Position numbers and translations under genes: made by a program. DNA of 64,000 nt from IMG/VR virus record IMGVR_UViG_3300005537_000001, positions 304,055-368,054 of that record; one strand, written 5' to 3'. The notes below the pieces were generated by a model. That model ran no database searches and was not told the DNA's origin. It saw nothing but the letters and a program-made list of their open reading frames with translations. Shown here piece after piece: positions 22,450 through 62,389 of this stretch (positions within the stretch are counted from its first letter, which is position 1; every line of letters begins with the position of its first letter).

Positions 22450-22689
22450 TCACGCTTTCTTCAAACCGTTGAGCCAATCTCTAGCGTCGCTCAAGGATTT
22501 CTTTGTGATTCTGTGATTAATCCCATTCTTGTTTACGGTGGCTATGTGGTAAAACGTTCCTTCCGGATGATTGGTTTGAACGATGTGATTTTCACCGCTT
22601 GTATGAATTTTTACCACGCTGTGCCCTTTTGCGGCATATAGATTCTTTATCTTGTTGGTTACGCTTTCATGCAGTTGATTAAGAAGCAT
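22450..22689 (-). CDS. Small basic His-rich protein with class-I leader (MLLNQLHE)
   Basis: ORF inserted between baseplate genes; leader resembles those of other small late ORFs. Confidence 0.65.
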   Translation of the reverse strand: MLLNQLHESVTNKIKNLYAAKGHSVVKIHTSGENHIVQTNHPEGTFYHIATVNKNGINHRITKKSLSDARDWLNGLKKA

Positions 22690-22697: not shown

Positions 22698-25600
22698 CTA
22701 GGTGGTTTGACGAAGAACTGTAGGAGTCAACGCGGTAACGATTTGCACGTTAGCTACGGTAGCGCAGGATTGAAGGACCTCATCGATGCCAGAATCAATG
22801 GTAAAGAGCGAACCGAATGAGTTGACTGAGAACGTTGGTACGATAACCACTGAGGATATCTGCGTAGGCAGTGCCTGATGAATCAACCCGATAAGTTCAG
22901 TAGCATAGAATGTTTTTCCAAAATCCCAATTTTTGATTTGGAAAAATGTGTTTATCGTGTTTATGACTTCTTGCTGAATTCTCTGGGATGTAAATGTTGC
23001 CGTTGGCGCGATGACAACCATGAACGTAGCTTGCAGCGTTTGATCTGCTTGCGGACCAAATAGCAGCTTGATTTTACCCGGATGTAAAACTACCGTATCC
23101 GAAAGCATCTTAAACTGCAGCAGATGACCATATGCCGTTAACAGATCAAGCGGCGTTGGTGGAGATGGCGCTACGTTGGTAATTCCCTTGATGAAATTTT
23201 GAATGCTGGTGTAGTATCCCTGCGTCAAGATGTAGCTGTCATGGATGTTAGATACGGATGGGTCTATCAGGTTGGCGTTAGGTGTAAAGTGCTGCCACAT
23301 GAAGTCCAAGCCGGTAGTTGTGTTGCAACCGAAGTTTCCGGTTGTTGAATTTACCGTCGCTGGTGCCGGAACAAATAGTTGCCGAGCCAGCTGAAATGAA
23401 TTGGCACCGCTTGTTACGATGTTTGACAGGAAGTTACCTGATCCGAATGAGAAATCAAGCCCCTCGTTTATCAAATTGATAGTACCCGTATCATAATCTG
23501 CTGTGTCGTATGGGTTTAAATCGAACCCCGATGCAAACACGTAATCACTACAGGGCACCGTGTCAATGATAAACGGCGCGCTTGGGTTAGTTGGAGTAAC
23601 ATTTATCAGCGTAAATTGATACGATCCAGCTGCAAAATTTTCAAACTGCAGCAGATTTCCAGGCGTGCCATTTCCAGCGGTTATGAAATTAATCGTTTCG
23701 GTTGGTAGAATTTCCAAGCTGTTTGTAAGCACGACGCCATTTTGATCAAACGCAAAGTTAACTACGTCATAGATGTCAGCTTGACCAAGCGGCTGTCCCT
23801 GAGCGTTAATGTTTGAGCGTAAGATTCGTATCTTGTCATAGAGCGGTAGAAGAGTTTCTGAGTCAATTATCTGGGTGCTTTGGTTAAACCAGAACTTGGT
23901 TGTAGGACTCGACGCGATTATTTTCATGTCGCGGTTGTAGATTGACCAGCTGGTTGGAGCTGAAACTGGTCCGCTTCTAGCCACCAGAAATACCCAATCC
24001 TGTCCAGGAACCGTAGTGTCGAAATTCATCTGCTCTACAAAATTGGGTCCGTTGCTGGCTCCACCCTGGAATAATCCCAATCCAACCGGTGGTAGGCTGA
24101 AGATTACGCTGGTAGGTATAAGCTGCCACCATCCAGTAAGGTTTGCCGTATGAGCTTGATTGATTCCAAACGCTCTAACGACGGCACCAAAAACTTGAGA
24201 TTGAACCAGCGTTCCAACGCTGATCTTGTTTGATGAATCGGTAACGCTTGGTGTGATGCTAGTTACGGTTCTGAAAATTTCTGGAACAGTAAGCTGTGCC
24301 GCGGTTGGGCCAACCGCAGCGACGGTGAGAGCGTTTCCACTAACGTCCGTTCCGACTATGGTAAATGTGTTTCCTGACATATTTCCAGCTGACGATAGAA
24401 TTACCTGAAATGGTGAAATTCCGATAAATGGACTTGACGTTAGCGTGAGAGGCGTGCTTGCGGTAGCGTGCTGCGCCGTTGAAATTGCAGATGTTTGAGC
24501 TGAAAATGGGCTAATGTCGATTACGAATGCATCTCCAGCTTGATATTCATTTCCAACAGATGAGATGATAAAATCTACCGGCACCGCGACGTCACCAGCT
24601 TGAGCTGAATATCGCTCAAGGCTTGGGCTTGAGGCGGCGACGGACAGAACATAATTTGGAAGCGCGCCTCGCACGTTGCTTATAACCGTGAAGGTATTGT
24701 TGTCGGACGTCATCTCGATGGTAATTGTTTCTACCTTGGATGATATCAATCCATTTGCTGGTGCGGGTTGTGGAACACCGCCTACGATCGTTCCATTATT
24801 TCCCGTTATCCCGTTAAGCGCGCCGTCACCATATCCCCACTGTTGATTAGGTGTAGAATCATTTGGATTGTACAGAGTTATGGTTCCACCACCAAACGTT
24901 TGAAGCAGGGGATTGAAGCGCAAACCAAAATACTGCTGCGCTGAAATTGTCTGTAAACCCGAACCAGTATCTCCAGGCGGAAAAAGATTTACACCATCAA
25001 TCGTACGAGGTAGATTAGAAACGTAGAGCTTGTCGTCAGTCATCGGATTAAGAATTGGATCTGGGACGACACCAACTTGAGTTCCATTTATGATAACGGT
25101 TGACAGCGGTTCACCAAAAAAGTGCTGATCGAGAGCTCCCTGAATTACCGTTTTTTCCAAGAGGGTTCCATTTGGTGGGGATAGTGAATTTGGAAATACA
25201 GCTCCGGCATTGTACCCGTACGGTGCTACTGGCAAACCATTGATGTCAAAGTAGATTGGGCGGTTATCCTCGATGAACACCCGGCGTGGATAGCTTACTA
25301 TTCCGACCGTCGTCCACGTAAATGCACCCTGCTCCGTTGTTGTGGTAGCTAGAATGTGCGTCATCGTGTTAAAGACCGCGTCAGTTTGTAGCTGCGGTTC
25401 GATGAACGAGTCGATGATTCCTCTTGAGCTGGCGGTAGTTACCTGAAGATCGATAGTCGTGTTTAGGGCGAGGGTAAGATCATCACCAAACAGCTTGATG
25501 TTTTGGAAAGCACCCGACGCATCGTTCCACTGAATGTATTTTGGTTGACCGGCGAACGTTCTGTTGATGGTGTTCAGCTTTAGAATGGTAGAATCCTGAA

Positions 25601-26906
25601 GCATGAACGTGTTGTAATCTTGACCATTTACCATGCGATTTTGCGCGTAGTAGGTTGATGGTGCAGCTTGGCGAACGTGCTCGATAGTTTCAGATGCCGA
25701 ATTGTTTTGCAGCGCTGACGTTAGCGAGAACGTTACGTTAAAGTTGTGCGCGAGGCCAGTTTTGTCAGAATACACAAGCGGCATCGCCTGTCCAGCTATC
25801 GAGGTTTTTGGAATGCTGATGTCTTGGTTGACCGACACTCTCGTCCAAAATTGAAATGTTCCTACCGGCGTGTCGCTGAAGTTACCATCACCGAAAAGCA
25901 GCGCTATTTGGTCATTTTCAAGTGATTCAATCTGATACTGAAAGCGCGTGTTTGTATTTGTGTTAAACGCTAAAGTTTGATCGGCGAGGTTGTTAACTGC
26001 GACCCAATTTTGGGTTATCGTGTTAGTATTATCAACTTGATATACCCAAACGTCGGTGTTGTTTACGTTAATGGCGCTTAGCTCAATTCTTCTATTTGCC
26101 GTAGGCTGGGTGATTGTGTAGTTCGTTAGGAGCAGCGTTCCCTGTTTAACAAACATCAAGAATCCAGTAAAGTCAGAACCATCCCCACGACCATCAGATG
26201 CGTACACGATGTTGAACTGCGCGTTAGAATCCGGCGCTCGCTCAAATGGGCCATTCGCATCAATATCTATCGGTACGCATTCCATTGCTACTGAGCTGGT
26301 GCTGGTAGCAGCGGTAAATGGAAATACACCATTGGTGAACGTTCCAGCTTGATTGTTTAGGGTGTAGAGCTGCAAAAGAACGTCAGCGATTTGAAACGAT
26401 TTAGATGGTTGCCCAAATGGTACGGTTAGCGCCGCGCTTATAACCAAAAAGAATTGTTCTTTCCAGTTGGTATTGTTTGGATCGTTCCACGTTATGGTCA
26501 CGTTTGCGAGGTTGTTGCCTAGTGAGTCGAAAATTGTTTGATCAGTTAGAACGGTGTTTATCTTGACTAGACCACGAGCCGGAATATTTCTTGAAGCTGA
26601 ATAGGAAATAAGTTTTGCTAGGCGAAGAATAGATTGCTTGCGCTGCGCGGTTGAGATGAAATTTTCATGCGCTGCAACGTCGGTGCGATACGCTATCAAT
26701 TCTGCGGTATAGGCAAACAGTTCAAGGAGGGCGATGAGCTCCGAGCTCTCGATGAAGTCATTGTAATCTTCAGCATAGTAAATCTGAAGATATTGTAGAA
26801 GTGATTCCTTTACTGTATCGAAGTCAAAGCTTGTAAAGTTAATCTGTTGAAAAGCGGTGTAAACTTTATTCCACGCTTCTGCCGCATATACGTTGATTAT
26901 TGTCAT
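22698..26906 (-). CDS. Baseplate wedge subunit, T4 gp6-like, with large internal insertion (1402 aa)
   Basis: DFDTVKESLLQYL...DFIESS...LLELFAY...ENFISTAQ; L.FGDG; ETIEHVRQAAP..Y..QNRMV..QDY; C-terminal FF....W.FG..FY.TEL. Confidence 0.85.
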   Translation of the reverse strand: MTIINVYAAEAWNKVYTAFQQINFTSFDFDTVKESLLQYLQIYYAEDYNDFIESSELIALLELFAYTAELIAYRTDVAAHENFISTAQRKQSILRLAKLISYSASRNIPARGLVKINTVLTDQTIFDSLGNNLANVTITWNDPNNTNWKEQFFLVISAALTVPFGQPSKSFQIADVLLQLYTLNNQAGTFTNGVFPFTAATSTSSVAMECVPIDIDANGPFERAPDSNAQFNIVYASDGRGDGSDFTGFLMFVKQGTLLLTNYTITQPTANRRIELSAINVNNTDVWVYQVDNTNTITQNWVAVNNLADQTLAFNTNTNTRFQYQIESLENDQIALLFGDGNFSDTPVGTFQFWTRVSVNQDISIPKTSIAGQAMPLVYSDKTGLAHNFNVTFSLTSALQNNSASETIEHVRQAAPSTYYAQNRMVNGQDYNTFMLQDSTILKLNTINRTFAGQPKYIQWNDASGAFQNIKLFGDDLTLALNTTIDLQVTTASSRGIIDSFIEPQLQTDAVFNTMTHILATTTTEQGAFTWTTVGIVSYPRRVFIEDNRPIYFDINGLPVAPYGYNAGAVFPNSLSPPNGTLLEKTVIQGALDQHFFGEPLSTVIINGTQVGVVPDPILNPMTDDKLYVSNLPRTIDGVNLFPPGDTGSGLQTISAQQYFGLRFNPLLQTFGGGTITLYNPNDSTPNQQWGYGDGALNGITGNNGTIVGGVPQPAPANGLISSKVETITIEMTSDNNTFTVISNVRGALPNYVLSVAASSPSLERYSAQAGDVAVPVDFIISSVGNEYQAGDAFVIDISPFSAQTSAISTAQHATASTPLTLTSSPFIGISPFQVILSSAGNMSGNTFTIVGTDVSGNALTVAAVGPTAAQLTVPEIFRTVTSITPSVTDSSNKISVGTLVQSQVFGAVVRAFGINQAHTANLTGWWQLIPTSVIFSLPPVGLGLFQGGASNGPNFVEQMNFDTTVPGQDWVFLVARSGPVSAPTSWSIYNRDMKIIASSPTTKFWFNQSTQIIDSETLLPLYDKIRILRSNINAQGQPLGQADIYDVVNFAFDQNGVVLTNSLEILPTETINFITAGNGTPGNLLQFENFAAGSYQFTLINVTPTNPSAPFIIDTVPCSDYVFASGFDLNPYDTADYDTGTINLINEGLDFSFGSGNFLSNIVTSGANSFQLARQLFVPAPATVNSTTGNFGCNTTTGLDFMWQHFTPNANLIDPSVSNIHDSYILTQGYYTSIQNFIKGITNVAPSPPTPLDLLTAYGHLLQFKMLSDTVVLHPGKIKLLFGPQADQTLQATFMVVIAPTATFTSQRIQQEVINTINTFFQIKNWDFGKTFYATELIGLIHQALPTQISSVVIVPTFSVNSFGSLFTIDSGIDEVLQSCATVANVQIVTALTPTVLRQTT

Positions 26907-26907: not shown

Positions 26908-27561
26908 CTATTTTCCTATGCTCTTTTCAATCGCCTTGAATTCTGGATAATCATAACCATCGTCTCTGGCCATTTTGATGTACCCGCAAACCCTGTCAGT
27001 GTCATACCCATTCTTTAACAGTCGCAACAAATACTTTATTAATTTTTCCCTGTCACCAAAAGATATATCCACTAATGATGGGTGAATATAGGACCCCTTA
27101 GCCTCACCAAGTTTTCCGATGCTCTTTTCAATCGTTTTGAATTCTGGATAGTCGTACCCAGCATTCTTGCATTTTTCTATCCATTGCTCTACGTCGTTAG
27201 AAGATTGAGATGTTCCATGCTTGAGTCTATGCAAGCACAACCGAATAAATTTATCCTTGTCCTTGAACTTAACCAGCTTAAAACCACCAAAATCACCTAT
27301 TTTTATACCGTATTCTGACGTTCCCTCGGCTATTTTTCCGATGCTCTGCTCAATGGTCTTGAATTCTGAATAGTTATAACCGGCATTCTTGCACATCTTT
27401 ACCCAATATTGCACTTCACTTATACTTCCGGATCTTAATTCCTTTAGACATAGCTTGATGAATTTTTCATGATCTCGAAACCTAACTACACGTTCACCAC
27501 CCGGTTCATACACCGTGATGCCATCGTTATTTTTCTCTTGTAGAAGTTCAGCTAGCTTCAT
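26908..27561 (-). CDS. Three-repeat protein (GY.Y[PS]EFK.IE.SIGK) with class-I leader MKLAELLQE
   Basis: Three related helical units visible in the translation; AT-rich; inserted between gp25 and gp6. Confidence 0.75.
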   Translation of the reverse strand: MKLAELLQEKNNDGITVYEPGGERVVRFRDHEKFIKLCLKELRSGSISEVQYWVKMCKNAGYNYSEFKTIEQSIGKIAEGTSEYGIKIGDFGGFKLVKFKDKDKFIRLCLHRLKHGTSQSSNDVEQWIEKCKNAGYDYPEFKTIEKSIGKLGEAKGSYIHPSLVDISFGDREKLIKYLLRLLKNGYDTDRVCGYIKMARDDGYDYPEFKAIEKSIGK

Positions 27562-27929
27562 TGAGTTGGTACCTCAATGTTTAAAACGTCGGTCACGTTA
27601 AACTCAATGTAGAGTAAGTTTGCCGCGGCGATGATCGCGTTGTTGTTCGGCAGCGCCGTTACGTTGAGCGAGAGCAGCTTGACGCGCGGATCATAGTTGA
27701 ACACGGCCGTAAGATCTTCTTCGATGATGCCGATCGTTTTTGCGTCGTTTGGTTCGAACGCCATAATCGGAATTCTAGTTCCAAAGTTTGGCATCATCAC
27801 CCTTTCGCCTTTTATCGTATAGATCTGATTCAGGAGATCCTGCTTTACCAGGTCGATGTTGGTTAACACGAACGACTTGGAAACAAGCCAGTTCGCCGTC
27901 GAAAATCCTCTGTAAATTGCCTGCGCCAT
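27558..27929 (-). CDS. Baseplate wedge subunit gp25-like
   Basis: DLVKQDLLN...T.KGERVM.P.FGT.I....FEP...YDPRV. Confidence 0.9.
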   Translation of the reverse strand: MAQAIYRGFSTANWLVSKSFVLTNIDLVKQDLLNQIYTIKGERVMMPNFGTRIPIMAFEPNDAKTIGIIEEDLTAVFNYDPRVKLLSLNVTALPNNNAIIAAANLLYIEFNVTDVLNIEVPTQ

Positions 27930-41047: not shown

Positions 41048-42296
41048 TCGCGAGCTAGACAGATCTAATCCTCTCTTCGTTGGTAACTTTTTCGACCTAA
41101 AGGGTATGTGGTGGAGGAAGCGGAAGCAGCGTCAGGGGTTGATCATATCGGTTGCCGTCGCGTGGTATCGCATCATGAAGAGCAATCCGGCTGCGGCGGG
41201 GTTTGTCGAGAAAGAAACGCTCATAACCAACCTTACCAATCAAGTCAAGGATGCCAGAGTAATCCTTGATAAATTTTTCAACGTAACGAAGATCGGCTTC
41301 AACTTCAACAATGGTAATAAAAGCCCTTCAACCATAACGCCGAAGCGACTTGGGAAGCGGATGCTAACCGCCATCAAGGAAATTCTCAAGGAAATTTATT
41401 TTTGCCCAGGCGCTCAACCAGTAGACGAAGCGCTTACAAAAAGCTACGTCCACGTGCAGAAAAATGCGAGTCACATTCTAGCTCGACTGAAGGAAGAAAA
41501 TCGTGAGGACCTCATTCCTCCGGTATCCTGGATACTGAGACAGGACTCTCCCATCACCTTTTACTTTAGGGCGAGCGGCGCCTTGCAGCAGCGCGACACG
41601 TCAGTGTGGCCGGTGCGCGCCATCGAGATGTGGCCAGGCTGGCTGCGCAAGGCGTTGTTCGGCACCACTGTAGATATTGAAAACGCGTATTCACAATTTC
41701 TAGTTGAGCATCTTAAGCTAAAATATGAAAACAGCCCGCTGCAGCTTAAGCTGCGGTATCCGGATGTCCTTCGTAGCGACAGCGATAAGCTAAACTTCAG
41801 GCTAGAGATCTTGCAGCTGCTCAAGCTTGAAAACAGCTACGATAACATGAAATACGTAAAGCGCATCTTGATGTCGTTGGCCAATGGTTCAAATGCATCC
41901 GCCGCGCTGATGACGAATGGAAGCGGTATGTCTGAAACCGTGGCGCTCGTCAATGAAGCCAATCCTAAGCTGCTTCCAACTGAACTCGCTGTTCTTGGAA
42001 ACCGGCTTTCCAGCATCGTGAAGCAGTTTAGGGCAGCTCGGCGTGATCTCTGCCTGTACCTCTTGAAGGAAAAACCGACGCGCGCAAATCAAAAGAAAAT
42101 ATTCAAGATGTACATGGCGTGGGAACGGACAGCTCGATACAAGATATGGAATGCAGCTGGACAGTCAGGCTTGCACCTCCACGACGGCGTTGATGGAATC
42201 GTAACGGACAAGTCAGACAGTGAGCTTACCAGCCATATAGCACGACAAACTTCGCTGCGCGTAAGCGTCAGCACACCACTAGCAGAGGCAGCATAA
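41019..42296 (+). CDS. Family-A-like (TV-Pol-type) nucleic acid polymerase, stand-alone
   Basis: Ordered motifs: WP..LR..LF, motif A VDIENAY, motif B VKRILMSLANG, Y..WE, motif C LHLHDG. Confidence 0.55.
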   Translation: MLTFHPLDVDRELDRSNPLFVGNFFDLKGMWWRKRKQRQGLIISVAVAWYRIMKSNPAAAGFVEKETLITNLTNQVKDARVILDKFFNVTKIGFNFNNGNKSPSTITPKRLGKRMLTAIKEILKEIYFCPGAQPVDEALTKSYVHVQKNASHILARLKEENREDLIPPVSWILRQDSPITFYFRASGALQQRDTSVWPVRAIEMWPGWLRKALFGTTVDIENAYSQFLVEHLKLKYENSPLQLKLRYPDVLRSDSDKLNFRLEILQLLKLENSYDNMKYVKRILMSLANGSNASAALMTNGSGMSETVALVNEANPKLLPTELAVLGNRLSSIVKQFRAARRDLCLYLLKEKPTRANQKKIFKMYMAWERTARYKIWNAAGQSGLHLHDGVDGIVTDKSDSELTSHIARQTSLRVSVSTPLAEAA

Positions 42297-42688
42297 TGAT
42301 AACTGTAAAACTTCAAGAGCTTAATAAGAAAAATCTCAATGGGCGCATCTATCCTACAGCCGTAGTAGAAAAAGCGATTGAAAGCGCTAAGGAGCGTATC
42401 GAAAACGGTAATTTTTGGGGAACTCTTGGTGTACCGCAAGGTCCATCAATTCCACTTGACTTGATATCGCATAGAGTGCTTGCGCTAAGAATCGAGGGTG
42501 ACTATTTGGTCGGCGATGTAAAAATTTTAGATACGCCCATGGCTCGAACGTATCAGGAGATAGAAGAAAGTAAGCTATATTCTGTCACGTGGCGCCCGAT
42601 GGGTACAGGAAAGGTAGATAATGATGGTGTTATAACAGATTATAACATCATGGGAATAACAGCAATTCCTGCAACTGACGCAGCTTAA
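42296..42688 (+). CDS. Prohead-protease (gp21) paralogue lacking the catalytic His and Ser
   Basis: Aligns to 49241-49858: KNLNGRIYP, I.L..[IV]SH, G..[KR]IL.TP, GTG.V...G; GELNHP becomes GTLGVP and GVSSRG becomes TWRPMG. Confidence 0.75.
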   Translation: MITVKLQELNKKNLNGRIYPTAVVEKAIESAKERIENGNFWGTLGVPQGPSIPLDLISHRVLALRIEGDYLVGDVKILDTPMARTYQEIEESKLYSVTWRPMGTGKVDNDGVITDYNIMGITAIPATDAA

Positions 42689-48484: not shown

Positions 48485-49159
48485 ATGCTAGTTTGTGAAC
48501 TCCTAGAAGACGATCAATCGCGCGTAAATGTGGGCGGAAGCGCTCAAGCATCATTCGCGCGCGTTTTCAAGAAGAAATTTCCTAATTCCCGCGTAATATC
48601 TATCTCGCCGCGGTCATCGCAGGCAGCTGACATCATCGTGAAGCACAACGGTAAGAAGCTGCAGTTTGAGGTAAAGGCGAGGACTGGACCAGAAAGAACC
48701 AACGTGGTTTATGACAAGTCGCTAAGACGCGGCGCCCACGACCCTATCTTGGATGCTTTCGCGCGATCATTTGGCAAGGAACGCACGTTTAGCGAGCTTA
48801 TTGATTCGTATCGAAAGAAGGATTCTAGAATTGGTTTCCCAGGGGATCTAGGAGTTGTTTCATCCGGAAAGATACCACGTGAGTTCAACTCAACCGATCC
48901 AACGTTTCTTTCACAGCTGCGACAAGCTGTTATCAGGCGCCTGCAGGCTAACGGTGATAACTATTTTGCGATCCATGATCTTTCTACGGGTATCACTTCG
49001 GTGTATTTCACCGGTTTAGGTGATAACGTGCTTGGAGCTAAACCATATCCGAAGCTTTCATCTGTTCAGATAGACACGTACGGTGGAGGATACAAAGGTG
49101 GTATGCGGGTTGGGATCAAGGCCGTTATCGCGGCTTCGAGCAAAACTATCGCGCTGTAG
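48485..49159 (+). CDS. PD-(D/E)xK-type nuclease with class-I leader MLVCELLE
   Basis: ADI.V......QFEVK core; basic protein. Confidence 0.6.
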   Translation: MLVCELLEDDQSRVNVGGSAQASFARVFKKKFPNSRVISISPRSSQAADIIVKHNGKKLQFEVKARTGPERTNVVYDKSLRRGAHDPILDAFARSFGKERTFSELIDSYRKKDSRIGFPGDLGVVSSGKIPREFNSTDPTFLSQLRQAVIRRLQANGDNYFAIHDLSTGITSVYFTGLGDNVLGAKPYPKLSSVQIDTYGGGYKGGMRVGIKAVIAASSKTIAL

Positions 49160-49197: not shown

Positions 49198-49240
49198 ATC
49201 TGTGAATTCAATGTGTTCAGGTTATCTGACGGGAGACTCT

Positions 49241-49858
49241 ATGTCAAAGCTTATTCCTCTGTATGAGTATTTCAACCCAGTTGAAGCTCAATTGGTTGAG
49301 TCTCGGGACGCGCAGAAGAATCTTTATCTAGCTGGTAGAATGATGGCGGGTGAGGCAAAGAACCTCAACAACCGCAGCTATCCAGTTACCGAAATTGCTA
49401 AGGCGGTTGGTCTCATCAACCAACGAATTAAGGAAGGTGCCTTCATCGCTGGTGAGCTGAATCACCCAGACAACCTTTCAATCGATCTAAAGAATGTTTC
49501 ACACATCATCATCGAAGCATGGATGGATGGAAACAACGCCGTCGGTAAGTGCAGAATTTTGAACACCCCATCTGGACAAATAGTTCAGAGCCTCATTGAG
49601 GGTGGAATGAAGCTTGGAGTTTCTTCGCGTGGAACTGGAAACGTAAACCACAACGGCATAGTTGAGGATTTTTCGTTCGTAACGCTCGACATCGTAGCCC
49701 AACCATCCGGTCCAGGCTGCTACCCAGATGTAGTTCGTGAAGGTTTGGAACAGCCAAAGATTCGCACCCTCGCCGAAATGGCGGTGGAAGATGTCAAGGC
49801 GCAAAAATTCTTGACGCGTGAAGTGTTCAAGTTCATCGCATCACTGACGAAGAAGTAA
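49241..49858 (+). CDS. Prohead core protease gp21
   Basis: N.N.R.YP, GELNHP (His), VSH.I, IL.TP.G, LGVSSRG.G (Ser), D.VA.PS; ATG 49241 has a GGGAG SD. Confidence 0.93.
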   Translation: MSKLIPLYEYFNPVEAQLVESRDAQKNLYLAGRMMAGEAKNLNNRSYPVTEIAKAVGLINQRIKEGAFIAGELNHPDNLSIDLKNVSHIIIEAWMDGNNAVGKCRILNTPSGQIVQSLIEGGMKLGVSSRGTGNVNHNGIVEDFSFVTLDIVAQPSGPGCYPDVVREGLEQPKIRTLAEMAVEDVKAQKFLTREVFKFIASLTKK

Positions 49859-49859: not shown

Positions 49860-50636
49860 ATGTTAATCCAAGATCTTCTAAACATTTCAGAGGCGATGGC
49901 TAAAAATCCTGGTGACGAGGGTATGCGTCAGCGCGCGATTAAGGACATTCTTCGCAAGCTTAACAACGGCGTCATTACCAAGAAATCAGCTGATAAGCAG
50001 TTGAAAGATAAAGGACATCCCGGAGTTGATCTCGTTGAAGCTTTCCCTATGCCGCGCGGAGAGGAAGGCAAAAAGGAGCACAAGAAGAAGCTTGACGCGA
50101 TGTCTCCAAAGGAGCTTCTCGCTCACGTGATGAAGCACGCGTCAGAAGAAAAGGATGACGGTCCAGTTACTGCAGCTGACATCAAGAACCATGCTCGCCG
50201 GCTTGCCAAGCGTCTTGGACATGATAACGCAGAGCACTACGCTGACAAGATTAAGGATCACGTAACCGAAGCCGTGAGCGAAAAAGCATCAGCGGAAATG
50301 ACGCGAATCAGAGCTGAAATGAAGAAGGTTAGCAGCGAAATAGATTCAATCATAGCTGATGGTGGCCAAGTTAGCACGACCGATCCACTCAACGTGAAGC
50401 TATCAAAGCTTAGAAAGGATCTTGTCAAGCTGCGTCGTTCTGTCAATGAAGAATTTCTAGAAGAAGCAAAAATGCCTTCTAAAGCATCAATGATGCGGGT
50501 AGCGATGGCGATCGCTAAGAAGCACAAGGTAGATTTTGACGACAAAGATGGTGCCGTGGTAAAGGCGGCTATCGTTGAGTGCTATGCTCAAGGTTATGAG
50601 GACGGCATAATATCGGTAGAGGGTGGAGAAGTATAA
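49860..50636 (+). CDS. Prohead core / internal head protein (multi-segment)
   Basis: Leader MLIQDLLNISE; charged segments separated by LVE, VTE, VNE and LEE. Confidence 0.6.
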   Translation: MLIQDLLNISEAMAKNPGDEGMRQRAIKDILRKLNNGVITKKSADKQLKDKGHPGVDLVEAFPMPRGEEGKKEHKKKLDAMSPKELLAHVMKHASEEKDDGPVTAADIKNHARRLAKRLGHDNAEHYADKIKDHVTEAVSEKASAEMTRIRAEMKKVSSEIDSIIADGGQVSTTDPLNVKLSKLRKDLVKLRRSVNEEFLEEAKMPSKASMMRVAMAIAKKHKVDFDDKDGAVVKAAIVECYAQGYEDGIISVEGGEV

Positions 50637-50947
50637 TGGATCAAGCAGCACGAGACGCTCTGCGCGCGCTAGCCGGAATAAAACCAGCACCCAAAGGTGC
50701 TCCAGGTGTTCTCAAGTCGGTATTCGAAGGAATGCCAACCGATAAGAACGCGCTGCGGGTAATGGCTGGCCTCCCAGTTAAAGAGGATACTACCGGTCCA
50801 GCTATCGTACAGCCAGTAGTACCAACACCAGCTCCACCACTAACGCAGGGTGGTCCAGTAGAAGCACCGGAAACAGATTTGGATAAGGTCGAGAAGCTTC
50901 TTCACGAAGCAATCGCTCTTTTGAATAACGTTAAGAAGGCCAAGTAG
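50636..50947 (+). CDS. Small head-module protein with two LR.[LM]AG motifs
   Basis: ALRALAGI and ALRVMAGL. Confidence 0.65.
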   Translation: MDQAARDALRALAGIKPAPKGAPGVLKSVFEGMPTDKNALRVMAGLPVKEDTTGPAIVQPVVPTPAPPLTQGGPVEAPETDLDKVEKLLHEAIALLNNVKKAK

Positions 50948-50968
50948 GCTAACCACAAGGGGATATAA

Positions 50969-52309
50969 ATGGAAAACCAGAGACTAAAAGAACTAGCTGG
51001 ACTCATCACTGAAAAGAAGTGGTCTGGTGAAGTTAAGACAAAGTGGAAGCCTACCGAAGGTACATTCACCGGTAAGGCAGGATCAATCGTTAAGGCTCTC
51101 TTGGATGCTCCAGGTGGTGCCAAGAAGGCCATGTCGCGCTTGAACTTCTACATCAACCGCGCCGGCGATAAGCTTGAGAACAGGGAAGAGCTTGAAAAAG
51201 CTAAGGCCGCTCTCGAGAAGAAAATTGCCGCCATGAAGGAAGAAGTAGAGGGTGTCGCTCGTCGCGCTGGCATCATTCTTGAAAAGAAGAGTGAACCAGA
51301 GGACATGGAACCAGATATGGACATGGGTGATGGCGATGAGGCTCCAAAGGCTAAGGGCGATGATGAAGAGGAAGAGTCACTTCCAAAGATCGTCAAGAAG
51401 ATCGCTAAGAAGGCGGTCGGTAAAGATGTCGAGGAACTCGAAGAGCTCATCATGAAGGTTTACAGCGCTGGCCACAAGGACGGTGAGAAGGAAGCTTCAG
51501 AGAAGAAGGAAAAATCCGTCAAGGAGAGCGTCAGCCTAACTGAAAAATTCCACGTTAAGAAAGGCAAAAAGGTTATGATGAGCGGCTCAAAGGCCGAATG
51601 TGAGGAATTTGCCGACGAGCACGGTGGTGAAGTCGTTAAGGGCGAGCCTATGACCGAGCAGGAGCTAGCTGAGCGTCATCACGTTAAGAAGAAGGGTAAG
51701 GTTGTCAAGAGCGGATCGAAGGCTGAAATGGATGCCATGGCTGCTGGTGACAAGGAAATGACCGTTCACAAGGGTGAGGAAATGACCGAGGAAGAACTTT
51801 CCGAGAAGCACCACGTTAAGAAGGGTGGTAAGGTAACGTTCAAGGGCAGCAAGAAAGGCGCTATGGATCACGCCGATGAGCATGGTGGTCAAATAGTTAA
51901 GGGCGATCCTGATGAGCAGATGGACGAAGAAATCGATCTTGAGTCCGCCATCCTAGAGGATGAGGCGGCAGCCAAGAAGATGCTGTCAATGCTTGACCAT
52001 CATGGTAAAACTGTAATGACGTCGATGGGCAAGGGAGTAATCACCGGCATCGTTAAGCAGGCGAAGACGACTGCTGACGGTAAGGCTGGTCCATACGTTC
52101 ACAGCGTAACCGTAAGGATGGGCGACAACACAGTTCACGTGATGCCTGCAAATCAAGTTAAGCTCTTCAAGGGCAAGAAACCCGATGGCAAGATGCTACC
52201 AAAGGGTGTTGGCTCACTAGCCATCGCGAGCGCTGACAAAGGCGTAGTTGCAAATGGTGGTAAGGAGTCAGGAACTAAGCCATCCGGCAAGAGCATGTGG
52301 AAGGCCTAA
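50969..52309 (+). CDS. Internal head/core protein: LAG tag, DUF3175-like domain, three His/Lys repeats
   Basis: RLKELAGLITE; KWS...AMSRLNFYINRAG..L....LEKAK (DUF3175-like); three copies of E[KR][FH]HVKK.....GSK. Confidence 0.65.
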   Translation: MENQRLKELAGLITEKKWSGEVKTKWKPTEGTFTGKAGSIVKALLDAPGGAKKAMSRLNFYINRAGDKLENREELEKAKAALEKKIAAMKEEVEGVARRAGIILEKKSEPEDMEPDMDMGDGDEAPKAKGDDEEEESLPKIVKKIAKKAVGKDVEELEELIMKVYSAGHKDGEKEASEKKEKSVKESVSLTEKFHVKKGKKVMMSGSKAECEEFADEHGGEVVKGEPMTEQELAERHHVKKKGKVVKSGSKAEMDAMAAGDKEMTVHKGEEMTEEELSEKHHVKKGGKVTFKGSKKGAMDHADEHGGQIVKGDPDEQMDEEIDLESAILEDEAAAKKMLSMLDHHGKTVMTSMGKGVITGIVKQAKTTADGKAGPYVHSVTVRMGDNTVHVMPANQVKLFKGKKPDGKMLPKGVGSLAIASADKGVVANGGKESGTKPSGKSMWKA

Positions 52310-52594
52310 GTGGATGAATCTCGCCTCAAGAGACTCGCTGGTATTTTAACCGAAGAGGCCGATAAGAAGGTAATTCCTATCGGCCTCCACTTCGGTCTTG
52401 GCGACGGAGGCAACATGCACAAGGCGGTCGACGCGCTGCTTGAAGCTGGAATTGAAGTGGACATGAATTATTCGATGGGTGTTTATTATTTCAACTTCAA
52501 GAGTGAAAAGCTTGCCGATGAAGCTCACAGGATTGTAGCTAAAGTTATCGATAAGAAAAAAGAGCAGAAGTGGAGCGAAAATGCTAGTACGTGA
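52310..52594 (+). CDS. Small protein with LAG tag; paralogue of the next gene
   Basis: GTG start; RLKRLAGILTE; HFG...KA..AL..A.[IV]E.D....G..YF.F. Confidence 0.7.
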   Translation: MDESRLKRLAGILTEEADKKVIPIGLHFGLGDGGNMHKAVDALLEAGIEVDMNYSMGVYYFNFKSEKLADEAHRIVAKVIDKKKEQKWSENAST

Positions 52595-52850
52595 ACTGTT
52601 GGAAGCAAAAATGACCAAACCAGATTATAAGAACTGGTATGGTAATATACATTTCGGTTTTGAACATAAGCCAAACGCTACCAAGGCTGCAGCAGCTCTG
52701 AAGAAAGCTGACGTTGAATTTGATAGCGATACTAACGGCGGCATCACCTATTTCTATTTTGATACCAAATCTGACATGAAGAAAGCTATCAAGATTGTAA
52801 CCCCAGTTATTGATGCATCCAAGGAATCCGAATGGGGTTCATCCGAATAA
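52581..52850 (+). CDS. Small protein with class-I leader; paralogue of the previous gene
   Basis: MLVRELLE; same HFG...KA..AL..A.VE.D...G..YF.F...VID..KE..W core. Confidence 0.7.
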   Translation: MLVRELLEAKMTKPDYKNWYGNIHFGFEHKPNATKAAAALKKADVEFDSDTNGGITYFYFDTKSDMKKAIKIVTPVIDASKESEWGSSE

Positions 52851-53459
52851 ATGGATATTAGCAAGTTACGAAAATTAGCTGGAATGCCATCTGCCACGGT
52901 TAGCAAGAAGATACTAACTGAAGCTGCAGAGTCAAAGCGCGTAATCGTGCTAAATGGATCACTGCACCCACCTGGTAAATCCCACACACGAAAGATAGCT
53001 GAAAAATTTCTTAAGCTGATACCGAATTCAACCGGTGAAATAGTTGATTTGGTTGACTACGACATTAAGCCCGGTAACGGTGCTGATGCTGCTGATGATG
53101 ATTGGAAAACTATTCTACCAAAGATACTTGAGTGCGATGTTCTAGTATGGGCTACACCTCTCTGGTGGGGTAACCACTCATCGCTTATTCAACGAGCGAT
53201 CGAGAGAATGGATTCGCTAACCGACAAGAAGGGATTTCCGGTAACGATTAAGAATAAATTTGCCGCGATATTGATTAGCGGTGCCGATGATGGCGCTCAA
53301 TCAACTCAGGCGGGTTTGATGGAAGTATCTACCTATTTCGGATTTACACTTCCACCAGTGTGTGGATTTTATAGTTTGGAAAATGGTAAGTGGGATGATG
53401 AATCCGAAAAACAGTTGAAAATTACAGCTGATAATTTGGCGCAGGCTCTGTCTCGCTAA
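52851..53459 (+). CDS. Flavodoxin-like NAD(P)H-dependent FMN reductase with LAG tag
   Basis: VIVLNGS.....S.T; DDW..I..KILE.D.LV.ATP.WWG..SS.....IERMD; NK.A......DG. Confidence 0.85.
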   Translation: MDISKLRKLAGMPSATVSKKILTEAAESKRVIVLNGSLHPPGKSHTRKIAEKFLKLIPNSTGEIVDLVDYDIKPGNGADAADDDWKTILPKILECDVLVWATPLWWGNHSSLIQRAIERMDSLTDKKGFPVTIKNKFAAILISGADDGAQSTQAGLMEVSTYFGFTLPPVCGFYSLENGKWDDESEKQLKITADNLAQALSR

Positions 53460-53516
53460 ATTTCAGAACTCGCGCTGCAATCACATTGACGGCGCTATAA
53501 CAATAAGGAGACGACA

Positions 53517-53717
53517 ATGGCTGATACAAACGCTCTAAAGAGCATGTTGAACAACTTTATTAATGATAAGCCTGAAGAGGCTACTCTTGATCTTCATGGT
53601 TACTTGACAACAAAGATGAAGGACGTTGCGGGTATTAGCGTAGCTGATGAACCACTTGTGGATGACGACACCGTTCCAGAAGTTGACCCCGAAGCTACCC
53701 AAGAAGCTACAGAGTAA
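53517..53717 (+). CDS. Small acidic prohead core protein (gp67/gp68-like position)
   Basis: SD AAGGAG; acidic tail; KMKDVAGI motif; precedes the scaffold. Confidence 0.55.
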   Translation: MADTNALKSMLNNFINDKPEEATLDLHGYLTTKMKDVAGISVADEPLVDDDTVPEVDPEATQEATE

Positions 53718-53788
53718 GCCTGATAAGTTGAAAGCAGGTAAGTTGAGGCGCCAAAAGCGCCGGTTTTTAGCGAATTTTTCGTGTGGCC

Positions 53789-53796
53789 CATAAATA
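53789..53796 (+). promoter_or_regulatory. Late promoter CATAAATA for scaffold-MCP
   Basis: Intergenic, about 110 nt upstream of the scaffold start. Confidence 0.75.
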
Positions 53797-53905
53797 AAAT
53801 CGTACGTTTCACGTAGATTTGTAATATGCAAACGCGTAAGGTTCAAAGCCTTTAGAGACGAATAAAAATCAGTCTCTATCCCACCCTTTTATAGGAGTTA
53901 AACTG

Positions 53906-54793
53906 ATGGATGAAATCCTACAGAAATTGCTAAGCTCTGAGCTACTCAGCGAAGAAGCCAAGGCAGAAATCTCCACTCAGTGGACTACCGCGGTTGAGTC
54001 TTACAAGACTACAGTTCGCGAGGAAGTAACACTCGAAGTGAGAAATGAAATTGCCGAACAGTGGGCAACTGAACGTGACGCTCTAGTTGAGAATGTCGAA
54101 ACGTTCGTTGCAAAGAAACTTGATGAAGAAATTGCAGAGCTAAAGTCAGACATTGAGCGCTTTCGCGACCTCGAGGCAGAATACGCCGAGAAGATCGTTG
54201 AAGAAAAGCACGCGATGGCCGAAACCCTCTCAGCAGAACTTGATGCGCTAGTTGAGAAAATGGATGCCTTCTTTGAGCTACGCCTCAGCGAAGAATTCCA
54301 AGAGCTCAAGGAAGATCTCCAGATCGTTCGCGAGAATGAATTCGGTCGTCAGATTTTCGAAGCCTACTCAACGACGTTCAACAAGAGCTTTGTTGATGAA
54401 GAGTCAACAGCCTCTAAGCTTGCAGCTGCAAACACAGAACTCGAAGAAGCTCAAAAGAAGATCAGCGCCCTTGAGGAATCAGGTGCGAAGATGGTTCGTG
54501 AAGCTAAGCTCGAAAAGATCCTTGCTCCTCTCAACGGTAAGAAGAAGGAACAGATGGCATTCGTACTTGCCAATGTTGAAACTTCCCGCCTTGAAGAAGC
54601 ATACAACCACTTCATTGGTCGCGTTCTGAAGGAAGAGCCTTCAGCGCAGCCTGGAAGCGATGCATCGCCAGCTCAGATCACTGAGTCAGCGTCCGTTGTA
54701 GTAACTGGCAATGAGTCTACCGAGACGCCAGCAAAGCCAGCAGTAGCCACCGACAAGTTTCGTGAACTCAAGAAACTTGCTGGCATTGCCTAG
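53906..54793 (+). CDS. Prohead scaffold protein gp22
   Basis: Acidic coiled coil, LSEE.K..I, N.FGR.IFEAY, C-terminal FRELKKLAGIA; directly upstream of the MCP. Confidence 0.85.
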   Translation: MDEILQKLLSSELLSEEAKAEISTQWTTAVESYKTTVREEVTLEVRNEIAEQWATERDALVENVETFVAKKLDEEIAELKSDIERFRDLEAEYAEKIVEEKHAMAETLSAELDALVEKMDAFFELRLSEEFQELKEDLQIVRENEFGRQIFEAYSTTFNKSFVDEESTASKLAAANTELEEAQKKISALEESGAKMVREAKLEKILAPLNGKKKEQMAFVLANVETSRLEEAYNHFIGRVLKEEPSAQPGSDASPAQITESASVVVTGNESTETPAKPAVATDKFRELKKLAGIA

Positions 54794-54818
54794 TAACTAG
54801 TCCAAAAGGAGAATTTCA

Positions 54819-56087: not shown

Positions 56088-56132
56088 CACCGAAAGAGAC
56101 AAAGCAAACGTCAAGTTGATTGTTTGAAAGTA

Positions 56133-56165
56133 GACGGGATATCGAAAGATATCCCGTTTTACTTT
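56133..56165 (+). terminator. Rho-independent terminator after the MCP
   Basis: ACGGGATATC-GAAA-GATATCCCGT then TTT. Confidence 0.9.
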
Positions 56166-56186
56166 GCGTGGGAATTGTGATATAAT
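56158..56186 (+). promoter_or_regulatory. Sigma70-type promoter overlapping the terminator tail
   Basis: TTTACT-17 bp-TATAAT with TG at the extended -10. Confidence 0.65.
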
Positions 56187-56216
56187 TGGTACTTCACTAG
56201 ATTATCGGAGTATTGG

Positions 56217-56525
56217 ATGAAGGTTCACGATAGAATCTGTCCTAAGTGTAATGGCGTTTTGGAACAAACTCGCACTCGATCAGATCAATGTAAAGCTTGC
56301 TTCTTGATCGAGAAACGGGAACTGGATATTCTTTCCGAGAAAGATAGAATAGCTGAGTGGGGTTATAAGTTTCTCGAAGGCCCATGGGTAGACAAATTCA
56401 ATCATCGCTGCTATAAAATTTTAACACCATGCGGGCATGAATGGTCTTTGCCATTTACAAATCTCATCAAAAATATCAAGAAAGTGCCAAATTCCAAGCC
56501 ATGTGGTATATGTAGAGGTAGATAA
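56217..56525 (+). CDS. Zinc-ribbon protein
   Basis: CPKC, CKAC, PCGHEW, CGIC. Confidence 0.65.
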   Translation: MKVHDRICPKCNGVLEQTRTRSDQCKACFLIEKRELDILSEKDRIAEWGYKFLEGPWVDKFNHRCYKILTPCGHEWSLPFTNLIKNIKKVPNSKPCGICRGR

Positions 56526-56527
56526 TT

Positions 56528-58193: not shown

Positions 58194-58210
58194 GCTCCGG
58201 GTCTGGATGC

Positions 58211-60761: not shown

Positions 60762-61529
60762 ATGACCCATTCATACTATCACGCACCGCGCACCTTCAAG
60801 GTCGTGCGCAGCGTTCCAGATCCTAGCGTACAAAATTTCCTATCAATATCAAAACCAGTAGCTCTTCCAGCGGCTGTAGATCTTCGCCCTAGCTGCCCAC
60901 CGGTATATGATCAGGGCGATCTTGGCTCATGCACCGGCAACGCGATCGCGGCGGCGATTGAATTTGATCTCATGAAGCAGGGAAAATCACCCATCGCACC
61001 GTCACGCCTGTTCATCTACTACAACGAGCGCCTGATGGAAGGTGACGTTGGCGAGGATGCCGGCGCCCAAATTCACGACGGCATCAAGTGCATCGCCACC
61101 TACGGTGTTTGCGCCGAAGCTCTATGGCCATACAACCCAGCTGCATTTACCGTAAAGCCGAGCGCTGAAGCTTATGCCGCCGCGGCAGCTGAAAAGGCGC
61201 TGAGCTATTACGCGCTCGACATCACCGTTGACGCAATGAAGCAGGCGCTTGCCCAAGGCTATCCGATCGTTATTGGGATGCAGGTATTTGGAGAGATGGA
61301 AAGTGAATACGTAGCAAAAACCGGCCACGTTTCAATGCCATCAAATCCAAGCGACAGCCTTGGTGGTCACTGCGTGCTAGTAGTTGGGTATGATGACTCG
61401 AAGCAGTGCCTGATAGTGCGCAACAGCTGGGGTGCCGATTGGGGCATCGGCGGGTACTTTACCCTGCCGTATGCGTACGTAACTCCTGAGCTGATGACCG
61501 ATTTTTGGGTTATTACCGCGGTAGCATGA
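60762..61529 (+). CDS. Papain-like C1 cysteine peptidase
   Basis: LP..VDLR; DQG.LGSCT (Gln, Cys); SRLFIYY; GGHCV (His); RNSWG..WG..GY (Asn). Confidence 0.92.
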   Translation: MTHSYYHAPRTFKVVRSVPDPSVQNFLSISKPVALPAAVDLRPSCPPVYDQGDLGSCTGNAIAAAIEFDLMKQGKSPIAPSRLFIYYNERLMEGDVGEDAGAQIHDGIKCIATYGVCAEALWPYNPAAFTVKPSAEAYAAAAAEKALSYYALDITVDAMKQALAQGYPIVIGMQVFGEMESEYVAKTGHVSMPSNPSDSLGGHCVLVVGYDDSKQCLIVRNSWGADWGIGGYFTLPYAYVTPELMTDFWVITAVA

Positions 61530-62389
61530 TGAAGCTTGTAGCTGAACTTTCTAGGTTGATTCCACGCGGCCTCCTGCAGGAGGCCGATTTGTCTGGTGAG
61601 AGGGATTCTGCTGGAAAATTCACGAGAGTTGCGCGCGGCAGGCTTATTGGAAGGTTTGCTCAAGGATTTAGCCTACAGCAAATTCACAGCATGATGAAGG
61701 TTAAGAAATTAGATAGCGCGGAGCAAGATGACATCTATGACGAGATTCTAGCTGAAAAGGATGTCGTCATTAAGCGCGCGCTGCACTACCTGAAGGATGA
61801 TGATGTCGCGGCGCTAAAGCAGCTGATATTTTACGCTAAAAAGTTTGGGCATTATTACCCAGAATTCAAGGCGATAGAAAAGAGCATGGGAGTACAAGAA
61901 GGTTCCTCGCAGCGCGCGTTCTCAGCTGGATATGGTGACGATGAAAACATTCAATTTGTAAATCGACGCCGTGGAAAGAAGGTTGTAAAGAGCGTCATCG
62001 TGAAGGAAGAGAAGCTCACCTTTACCGCGCAGGAACTAACGCTAGATAGCCTACGCAGTCAAGGAGATTTGGTGGTATTAGTAATGAGCGATTTAGATAT
62101 TGGTGACTATTACGGCATTTCCGTAATATTTAGGCGCAATGGTAAAATTGAATCCTCGATTGGAGATGCTGCTGCAAAGGCTGAATGGAAGAAATACAAA
62201 AATGAAATTATCAAAACAGCACTCGATTTTCTGCACATTGGCAACAAAGAAAAGCTTCTCAAGGACATCCTAACCGATTACAAAGACGATCTTATCTATC
62301 TTGTAAAAGCGCTCATAAACCTTTCGCGAAAACAAGGTTTTGACTACCCTGAATTCAAGGCAATTGAGAAGAGTTTAAAAGCAAAGTAA
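61526..62389 (+). CDS. Multi-segment protein with two YPEFKAIEKS repeat domains
   Basis: ATGA-coupled to the peptidase; GHYYPEFKAIEKSM and GFDYPEFKAIEKSL; LQE and VQE junctions. Confidence 0.7.
   Translation: MMKLVAELSRLIPRGLLQEADLSGERDSAGKFTRVARGRLIGRFAQGFSLQQIHSMMKVKKLDSAEQDDIYDEILAEKDVVIKRALHYLKDDDVAALKQLIFYAKKFGHYYPEFKAIEKSMGVQEGSSQRAFSAGYGDDENIQFVNRRRGKKVVKSVIVKEEKLTFTAQELTLDSLRSQGDLVVLVMSDLDIGDYYGISVIFRRNGKIESSIGDAAAKAEWKKYKNEIIKTALDFLHIGNKEKLLKDILTDYKDDLIYLVKALINLSRKQGFDYPEFKAIEKSLKAK

What the first reader, a model, noticed from the sequence alone, without database searches (positions are those of the whole stretch)
26908..27561. Unrecognised helical repeat domain (…YPEFKAIEKS) arranged as a putative protease-processed polyprotein
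Seen: three units of D..K.I[KR]..L..L..G......[WY][IV]....GY.Y[PS]EFK.IE.SIGK. Each is preceded by a gp21-type site (LQE, IAE, LGE). The gene is an AT-rich insert between gp25 and gp6. Inference: the prohead protease would release three sequence-variant monomers with conserved C-terminal halves and variable N-terminal halves.
Basis: partly seen in the sequence, partly recalled or inferred. Interest (0 to 1): 0.65.

Follow-up and report, generated by a model that had tools for sequence, protein, structure and literature searches.

The report
Protease-cut repeat protein in jumbo phage
A soil jumbo phage carries, wedged between two baseplate genes, a fast-evolving gene made of three copies of a previously undescribed small protein domain. 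Each copy is followed by the short motif that T4-type head proteases cut, so the gene probably yields three small proteins packed into the phage head, though no experiment has shown this.

Summary
Window 26908-27561 (-) encodes a 217-aa protein of three tandem ~70-aa units (43-49% identical), each ending GY[DN]Y[PS]EFKxIE[KQ]SIGK. LQE, IAE and LGE sit exactly at the unit boundaries. The gene lies between gp25 and a gp6-like gene and is AT-rich, mostly because of its amino-acid content.

The unit is a new domain: a beta-hairpin plus three helices, with no convincing Pfam, PHROG, PDB or ESM-Atlas match. It is not rare: 245 cluster representatives were found, and 10 proteins of this 368-kb phage carry it.

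- **Linker motif.** In 196 units from about 100 proteins, 91% have [LIVM]xE within 20 residues after the unit, against 34% in random windows. The spacing varies.
- **Predicted structure.** The motifs fall in low-confidence linkers between separately folded domains.
- **Protease.** The phage encodes a T4-type S77 prohead protease.
- **N-terminus.** The protein starts with a T4 capsid-targeting-like motif (MKLAELLQE), shared by 15 of 504 genes here.
- **Locus variability.** In phages whose gp25/gp6 are 87-93% identical, the locus holds 3, 5+1, 6 or at least 5 units in shuffled order. Cultured relatives lack it.

Best reading: a head-targeted polyprotein cut into three ~8-kDa proteins (confidence about 0.5). 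Cleavage and virion location are untested.

The parts
26908..27561 (-). Gene for the 217-aa three-unit repeat protein (P0001), stop codon included
27535..27561 (-). Residues 1-9, MKLAELLQE: capsid-targeting-like N-terminal propeptide ending in L-Q-E
   Evidence: pLDDT <50 for residues 1-10
27334..27534 (-). Unit 1 (residues 10-76): beta-hairpin + 3 helices
27325..27333 (-). I77-A78-E79: candidate prohead-protease site in linker 1
27112..27324 (-). Unit 2 (residues 80-150)
27103..27111 (-). L151-G152-E153: candidate prohead-protease site in linker 2
26911..27102 (-). Unit 3 (residues 154-217)
27558..27929 (-). gp25-like baseplate wedge gene; its stop overlaps the repeat gene's start (ATGA)
22698..26906 (-). 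gp6-like baseplate wedge gene (1402 aa), starting 1 nt after the repeat gene's stop
49202..49858 (+). T4-type prohead protease (Peptidase_S77, phrog_207), the proposed processing enzyme
61505..62389 (+). Second protein of the window with two copies of the same domain (P0013)
48485..49159 (+). 224-aa protein next to the protease with the same kind of N-terminus (MLVCELLED)

Best explanation
The gene encodes a late, head-targeted polyprotein.

**Shown**
- It has three separately folding ~65-aa domains of a new family (beta-hairpin + three-helix bundle), joined by flexible linkers.
- Each linker carries [LI]-x-E followed by a small residue.
- The N-terminus is a 9-residue motif of the T4 capsid-targeting type.
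- A T4-type S77 prohead protease is encoded 22 kb away.
- The locus is hypervariable between near-identical phages.

**Inferred**
- The N-terminal motif takes the protein into the prohead core.
- There the protease cuts after E9, E79 and E153, removing the propeptide and releasing three mildly basic proteins: 8.1, 8.5 and 7.4 kDa, pI 8.6-8.9.

**More speculative**
- Like T4 IPI-III, the products stay in the head and enter the host with the DNA.
- The near-invariant C-terminal half (GYDYPEFKxIEKS) would be a common handle for a conserved phage partner.
- The variable N-terminal half would be the diversifying, host-facing part.
For: - **Protease present.** PF03420 scores 83 bits and phrog_207 gives 8.9e-53. 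The GELNHP and GVSSRG motifs are visible in the sequence.
- **Known specificity.** T4 gp21 cuts after Glu in L/I-X-E, and a 10-residue N-terminal CTS targets the internal proteins into the core (PMC9026906).
- **Linker motif in the family.** 179 of 196 units have [LIVM]xE within 20 aa after the unit, against a mean of 67.6 +/- 6.6 in random windows. With a small or polar P1' residue the count is 160/196 against 29. [LIVM]xD and [LIVM]xK are not enriched. The distance varies from 3 to 19 residues.
- **The motif result is robust.** Taking one unit per protein gives 84/104. In the next 20 residues only 15/194 have it. It holds in both YPEF-type and WPEL-type units.
- **Site accessibility.** The sites lie in pLDDT <50 segments (1-10, 79-82, 152-157) between domains of pLDDT 80-90; pTM is 0.38.
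- **N-terminal motif.** It occurs in 15/504 genes and at 0/1621 internal Met. Five of the 10 domain proteins have it, against 10 of 494 others (Fisher p = 2.6e-6). 29/150 family representatives start with it. It also starts a protein encoded next to the protease.
- **Split array keeps the motif.** In L012 the array is split into two genes, and each keeps its own such N-terminus.
- **Hypervariable locus.** Flanking gp25/gp6 are 87-93% identical, while the repeat protein is about 50% identical with 3, 6, 1+5 or at least 5 units in shuffled order.
- **MCP propeptide.** V-L-E31 and L-Q-E39 lie where T4 gp23 is cut.
- **Domain partners.** Elsewhere in the genome the domain is fused to an SLT transglycosylase and to a sigma-70 region 2. 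Other proteins with the N-terminal motif carry GNAT domains. These are plausible injected cargo.
- **Precedent for location.** Head-packaged Alt-family genes sit beside baseplate genes (PMC5512222).
Against: - No proteomic, RNA or biochemical data exist. The only public run holding the DNA is the probable source soil metagenome.
- No cultured phage among 50,697 records carries the domain, so no virion mass-spectrometry data can be borrowed.
- The motif is only three residues long, and the N-terminal pattern was defined after looking at these sequences.
- Two linkers of P0008 have F-T-E and Q-T-E instead of the canonical P3 residue.
- The gene sits in, and is translationally coupled to, a baseplate operon rather than the head module.
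- A sigma-like protein carries the domain without an obvious reason to be packaged.
- The protease-linker complex prediction gave no answer, which is not evidence either way.
Confidence: 0.5

Rival explanations
1. An uncleaved, multivalent cytoplasmic protein. The three domains stay joined and together bind a repeated or oligomeric target, such as a host defence or regulatory factor. The linker [LIV]xE motif would serve another purpose or another partner.
For: - Tandem arrays of 1-9 units are common in the family.
- The conserved surface motif suggests a common ligand.
- Hypervariability fits an arms-race protein whether or not it is cleaved.
- The domain also occurs in a sigma-like protein.
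Against: - This does not explain why a motif matching the phage's own protease specificity follows 82-91% of units at variable spacing and is absent 20-40 residues further on.
- It does not explain the shared N-terminal motif.
- It does not explain why unit order is free to shuffle.
Confidence: 0.22
2. A baseplate or tail accessory protein (assembly chaperone, adaptor or decoration), made with gp25 and gp6 and acting on them.
For: - The position between gp25 and gp6 is conserved in four related phage contigs.
- It has overlapping or adjacent start and stop codons with both neighbours.
Against: - Copy number and unit order change freely while gp25/gp6 stay about 90% identical.
- It is absent from RsoM2USA, XacN1 and PA5oct, which have homologous baseplates.
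- The same domain occurs in 9 other genes outside the tail module.
- In L004 a homing-endonuclease-like ORF sits in the same gap, so the site tolerates insertions.
Confidence: 0.1
3. A prohead core or scaffold component that is cleaved but then expelled or degraded like T4 gp22/gp67, so it has no role after injection.
For: - It shares the protease-site and N-terminal evidence of the best explanation.
- T4 core proteins are cut into several fragments (PMC9026906).
Against: - The sites lie only between well-folded domains and not within them.
- The gene is not in the head module, where scaffold-like proteins with many sites lie.
- It is hypervariable and dispensable in relatives, which is unlike a scaffold.
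Confidence: 0.12
4. A diverged RepB_C-type (PF21861) oligomerisation or DNA-associated domain, that is, a known domain.
For: - One unit of homologue P0005 scores 37.8 bits, above the 27.3 cut-off.
- P0013 unit 1 scores 21 bits.
Against: - P0001 itself gives no hit.
- Only 3 of 125 units match at E <= 0.01.
- The unit profile finds no RepB chain in the PDB.
- No structural match was found.
- tblastn of the best-matching unit finds nothing in 72,556 plasmids.
Confidence: 0.05

Closest known systems
T4 internal proteins IPI/IPII/IPIII and Alt (capsid-targeting sequence, gp21 processing)
   Same: - A short N-terminal propeptide ending in L/I-x-E.
- A T4-type S77 protease in the same genome.
- Small (~8 kDa), mildly basic predicted products.
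- A non-essential, fast-varying locus outside the head module.
   Different: - No sequence similarity to the IPs (no PHROG or Pfam hit).
- The propeptide is MK-L-x-E-L-L-x-E rather than the T4 sequence.
- Several products come from one gene as a tandem array, which is not described for T4 IPs.
- Nothing here has been shown experimentally.
T4 prohead core proteins gp22/gp67 and the inner-body/ejection proteins of phiKZ and SPN3US
   Same: - Multiple cleavages after Glu by the prohead protease in one polypeptide (PMC9026906; PMC10052503 abstract).
- Families of paralogues within one giant-phage genome.
   Different: - Here the sites separate compact folded domains rather than cutting a scaffold to pieces.
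- The motif is the T4-type [LIV]xE.
- The domain family is unrelated.
Polyvalent proteins of phages and conjugative elements (Iyer et al. 2017, PMC5512222)
   Same: - The concept of multi-module proteins packaged and delivered with the DNA and proteolytically processed.
- Genes lie next to virion genes.
   Different: - Polyvalent proteins join different enzymatic effector domains and often carry their own peptidase.
- This one is a homo-array of one small non-enzymatic domain, presumably cut by the head protease.
Pfam PF21861 RepB_C
   Same: A small helical domain; a few family members give weak to moderate HMM matches.
   Different: - P0001 does not match.
- Only 3/125 units match.
- There is no structural or PDB-sequence support.

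Membership tests
T4-type CTS-bearing prohead-protease substrates (IP/Alt class) | Phage encodes a gp21-type (Peptidase_S77) prohead protease | tested here: met
   PF03420 83.2 bits, above the cut-off; phrog_207 8.9e-53
T4-type CTS-bearing prohead-protease substrates (IP/Alt class) | N-terminal propeptide of about 10 residues ending in L/I-x-E | tested here: met
   MKLAELLQE. The motif is shared by 15/504 genes and occurs at 0/1621 internal Met. It resembles the T4 CTS in form, not in sequence.
T4-type CTS-bearing prohead-protease substrates (IP/Alt class) | Cleavage C-terminal to Glu demonstrated; protein present in the mature head and ejected | not testable with these tools
   The phage is uncultured. 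There is no RNA or proteome run, and complex prediction gave no answer.
T4-type CTS-bearing prohead-protease substrates (IP/Alt class) | Sequence homology to IPI, IPII, IPIII or Alt | tested here: not met
   No PHROG or Pfam family at E <= 0.1; no tblastn match in 50,697 phage records
Pfam PF21861 RepB_C | HMM score at or above the gathering cut-off (27.3 bits) | tested here: not met
   No hit for P0001. Only 3 of 125 units match at E <= 0.01. In the own genome the best is 15.5 bits, and in another protein.
Helical solenoid repeats (TPR/HEAT/ankyrin-like) | Units stack into one continuous superhelix | tested here: not met
Polyvalent proteins (Iyer et al. 2017) | Several different effector or enzymatic domains in one polypeptide | tested here: not met
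   Only one domain type, repeated; no enzymatic domain
Baseplate wedge module | Conserved presence with gp25/gp6 in phages sharing the baseplate | tested here: not met
   Absent between gp25 and gp6, and from the whole genome, in RsoM2USA, XacN1 and PA5oct

The most novel reading that the evidence does not exclude
T4-like jumbo phages of soil use a so far undescribed 'cassette polyprotein' system. Arrays of one to nine copies of a ~65-aa domain are each delimited by a prohead-protease site and headed by a capsid-targeting propeptide. The arrays are loaded into the head and cut into a set of small proteins injected with the DNA. The invariant half of the domain would be the packaging or ejection handle. 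The variable half would be a rapidly shuffled recognition surface against host factors, so one gene would supply a combinatorial arsenal. The same domain would also act as a removable loading tag on cargo such as an SLT transglycosylase.
Probability: 0.3. Interest if true: 0.78.

Novelty: new variant of a known kind. Interest (0 to 1): 0.62.

Why it matters
Proteins that phages carry inside the head and inject with their DNA are the first phage weapons to reach the host, as T4 IPI does against a restriction system. Outside a few model phages they are almost unknown, because they have no recognisable sequence signature.

Here three things together give a purely sequence-based way to predict the head-packaged, protease-processed protein set of uncultured T4-like jumbo phages:
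- a new domain family with 245 representatives;
- a conserved protease-site linker;
- a shared N-terminal motif.

They also suggest that a dsDNA phage can make several such proteins from one gene, as RNA viruses do with polyproteins. The locus changes completely between phages whose neighbouring genes are about 90% identical, which marks it as a likely arms-race locus worth testing.

Tried and rejected
- **Family scans.** Pfam and PHROGs on P0001 gave nothing below E 0.03.
- **Cultured phages and plasmids.** tblastn of P0001 and of the long homologue P0010 against 50,697 phage records found no match. megablast of the locus found no match. The unit profile found nothing in the whole genomes of RsoM2USA, XacN1 and PA5oct. 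tblastn of the RepB_C-like unit against plasmids found nothing, and pMV158 was not in the plasmid collection, so no direct RepB comparison was possible.
- **PDB by sequence.** The unit profile gave only chance-level hits, as did a single unit.
- **IMG/VR scans.** Scans with the unit alignment and the full-length alignment confirmed no relatives.
- **Complex prediction.** Protease with residues 62-100 gave no answer, which is not evidence for or against binding.
- **Promoter and repeats.** The T4 late-promoter box TATAAATA has no copies in the window. Tandem Repeats Finder on the DNA found none.
- **Sequencing runs.** Only the probable source soil metagenome holds the DNA and there is no RNA, so no reads were laid.
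- **RiPP-like reading.** A multi-core peptide precursor was considered and dropped: the units are folded domains, and the phage's own protease explains the motif.
- **Foreign AT-rich island.** This reading was rejected: the GC3 shift is small.

Full report
**1. What is there.**
Window 26908-27561 (minus strand) is an open frame of 217 codons. Its product, P0001, consists of three tandem units: residues 1-76, 77-150 and 151-217. They are 43-49% identical to each other. 21 columns are invariant, and 12 of those lie in the last 16 residues (GY-Y-EFK-IE-SIGK).

The dot counts of the written pattern are only approximate, because one loop varies from 7 to 10 residues. L-Q-E (7-9), I-A-E (77-79) and L-G-E (151-153) sit exactly at the unit boundaries.

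Tandem Repeats Finder sees no DNA repeat. The conserved peptide block differs between units at synonymous positions. The array is therefore old and kept by selection on the protein.

**2. Setting.**
The window is the last 64 kb of a 368,054-bp IMG/VR virus record with direct terminal repeats.
- The upstream gene is a gp25-type wedge protein (PF04965). Its stop overlaps the repeat gene's ATG.
- The downstream gene is a 1402-aa gp6-like wedge protein (phrog_10646, E 1.8e-245). It starts one base after the repeat gene's stop.
- A gp5-like hub gene lies further upstream.
- The head module, 22 kb away, holds the portal, a T4-type prohead protease (Peptidase_S77, 83 bits; phrog_207), scaffold-like proteins and the major capsid protein.
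- By capsid protein the nearest cultured phages are Ralstonia phage RsoM2USA (61%), Xanthomonas phage XacN1 (55%), Stenotrophomonas phages and Pseudomonas phage PA5oct (43%).

In RsoM2USA, XacN1 and PA5oct, gp25 is directly followed by gp6. Their whole genomes lack the domain. So the gene is indeed an insert.

Its GC is 39.2% against 48.0 +/- 4.4% for the genome's genes. GC3 is only about one SD low, so the AT-richness is mostly due to its Lys/Glu/Ile/Phe/Tyr/Asn-rich composition.

**3. The domain.**
No Pfam or PHROG family matches P0001.

With a 125-sequence alignment, AlphaFold2 models one unit at pLDDT 81 as a beta-hairpin followed by three helices. The full-length model shows three such domains with no fixed mutual arrangement (pTM 0.38). 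Segments of pLDDT <50 fall at residues 1-10, 79-82, 89-94, 152-157 and 160-163. It is a string of beads, not a solenoid.

One homologue's unit passes the Pfam RepB_C threshold. However, P0001 does not match, only 3 of 125 units match at E <= 0.01, and a unit profile finds no RepB chain in the PDB. I do not file the domain under RepB_C.

**4. The family.**
A word search found six relatives. An exhaustive profile search found 245 cluster representatives at E <= 0.001 and 74 at E <= 1e-10. They include proteins of 500-2000 aa with 4-9 units, in which the motif reads G-x-x-W-P-E-L-x-x-I-E-[KR]-S.

Contigs of long members carry a phage topoisomerase II or a homing endonuclease.

The window's own genome has the domain in 10 proteins. 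One is a second protein in the window (61505-62389). One is a fusion to an SLT transglycosylase, and one is a fusion to sigma-70 region 2.

**5. The test of the polyprotein idea.**
T4 gp21 cuts after Glu in L/I-X-E (PMC9026906). I asked whether such a motif follows units across the family.
- Of 196 units with at least 25 residues downstream, 179 (91%) have [LIVM]xE within 20 residues after the IEKS anchor. Random windows of the same proteins give 67.6 +/- 6.6 (34%).
- With a small or polar next residue the count is 160, against 29.
- The look-alike patterns [LIVM]xD and [LIVM]xK are at or below background.
- The distance from the anchor varies from 3 to 19 residues.
- The result holds with one unit per protein (84 of 104).
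- It collapses in the next 20 residues (15 of 194).
- It holds in both sequence sub-types.
- Glu content (11% against 7%) does not explain it.

A linear motif at variable distance in an otherwise unconserved, predicted-disordered linker is what a protease site looks like. It is not what a structural element looks like.

The capsid protein has V-L-E31 and L-Q-E39 where T4 gp23 is cut. This suggests, but does not show, that the specificity is conserved.

**6. The N-terminus.**
P0001 starts MKLAELLQE. Its relatives start MKLKELHE, MKLKELYE, MKLAELFE and the like.

In this genome 15 of 504 crude gene calls start with M-[KL]-[LIV..]-x-E-L-[LF]-(x)-E, whereas none of 1621 internal Met positions does. 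Five of the 10 domain-bearing proteins have it, against 10 of the other 494 (Fisher p = 2.6e-6). Other carriers are a 224-aa protein encoded next to the protease and two GNAT-domain proteins.

The form (M-K, an acidic residue, two hydrophobic residues, then Glu at position 8-10) is that of the T4 capsid-targeting sequence, whose removal by gp21 is documented. Caveat: I wrote the pattern after seeing these sequences.

In contig L012 the array is split into two genes, and each has its own copy of this N-terminus.

**7. Hypervariability.**
Three metagenomic contigs have gp25 and/or gp6 that are 87-93% identical to the window's. Between them they carry:
- a 6-unit gene (L011);
- a 1-unit gene plus a 5-unit gene (L012);
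- a gene of at least 5 units plus a GIY-YIG-like ORF (L004).

These proteins are about 50% identical to P0001. The unit types recur in a different order: P0001 unit 1 is closest to unit 2 of P0002, unit 5 of P0009 and unit 4 of P0008. Free reordering fits modules that act separately. Rapid turnover inside a conserved operon fits a host-interaction role better than a structural one.

**8. Interpretation.**
The protein is made late with the baseplate genes and taken into the prohead by its N-terminal propeptide. The S77 protease then cuts it after E9, E79 and E153 into three proteins of 8.1, 8.5 and 7.4 kDa (pI 8.6-8.9), comparable in size and charge to the T4 internal proteins.

The sequence features are shown. 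Targeting, cleavage, retention in the head and ejection are all inferred.

Location next to baseplate genes is not an objection. The head-packaged Alt family is noted to sit beside baseplate genes (PMC5512222).

I put about 0.5 on cleavage by the head protease. I put less on a role after injection.

Rivals:
- an uncleaved multivalent protein (0.22);
- a cleaved but expelled core component (0.12);
- a baseplate accessory (0.10);
- a RepB_C-type known domain (0.05).

**9. Limits.**
- No cultured phage carries the family.
- The only sequencing run with this DNA is the probable source soil metagenome, so no reads were laid.
- A protease-linker complex prediction returned no answer.
- Gene calls for the genome-wide counts were a simple longest-ORF procedure.

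Noticed in passing
window 50636-60631 (+): ORFs at 50636, 50969, 52310, 52851, 53906, 60044: A second short motif, L-[KR]-x-L-A-G-[ILM], occurs in six proteins of the genome, all in the head-module stretch of the window. Five have it at residues 6-9 of the N-terminus and one at the C-terminus of a scaffold-like protein. Shuffled proteomes give 0.14 on average. In two of them [LI]-T-E follows directly. It is possibly another class of prohead-targeting propeptide.
   Followed up: partly
window 22450-22689(-), 48485-49159(+), 52581-52850(+), 58239-58808(+), 59751-60032(+); G000 144543-153238, 188357-208005: A set of 15 genes shares the N-terminal motif M-[KL]-[LV]-x-E-L-[LF]-(x)-E. It includes two GNAT acetyltransferase-like proteins and a protein encoded next to the prohead protease. 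This may be the phage's head-packaged protein set.
   Followed up: partly
window 61505-62389 (+): This protein (P0013) has two copies of the same domain, an N-terminal L-I-P-R-G motif and a conserved basic module. Those features are shared with homologues P0005, P0006 and P0011. Its first unit is the only place in the genome with a weak RepB_C match.
   Followed up: partly
G000:C1:177100-177594 (L016:1100-1594) and G000:C1:194727-195713 (L017:7727-8713): The domain is fused to sigma-70 region 2, in the place where region 4 would be. In a second protein it lies N-terminal to an SLT lytic transglycosylase, with an L-D-E motif between them.
   Followed up: partly
L004:1220-1819: In a related contig, a 199-aa ORF that looks by eye like a GIY-YIG homing endonuclease sits between the repeat gene and gp6. 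The first ~160 and last ~120 bases of that contig are GC-rich and unrelated, so the contig looks chimeric and P0002 may be cut at its 5' end.
   Followed up: no
window 42287-42625 (+): A second, weak Peptidase_S77-like match (16.3 bits, below the cut-off), 7 kb upstream of the real prohead protease.
   Followed up: no
window 22698-26906 (-): The gp6-like wedge protein has 1402 residues, with only the N-terminal ~540 matching phrog_10646 strongly. The C-terminal part is unassigned.
   Followed up: no
window 53906-54793 (+): A 295-aa acidic protein upstream of the capsid gene has 22 [LIVM]xE motifs (7.5 per 100 residues), the likely gp22-type scaffold.
   Followed up: no
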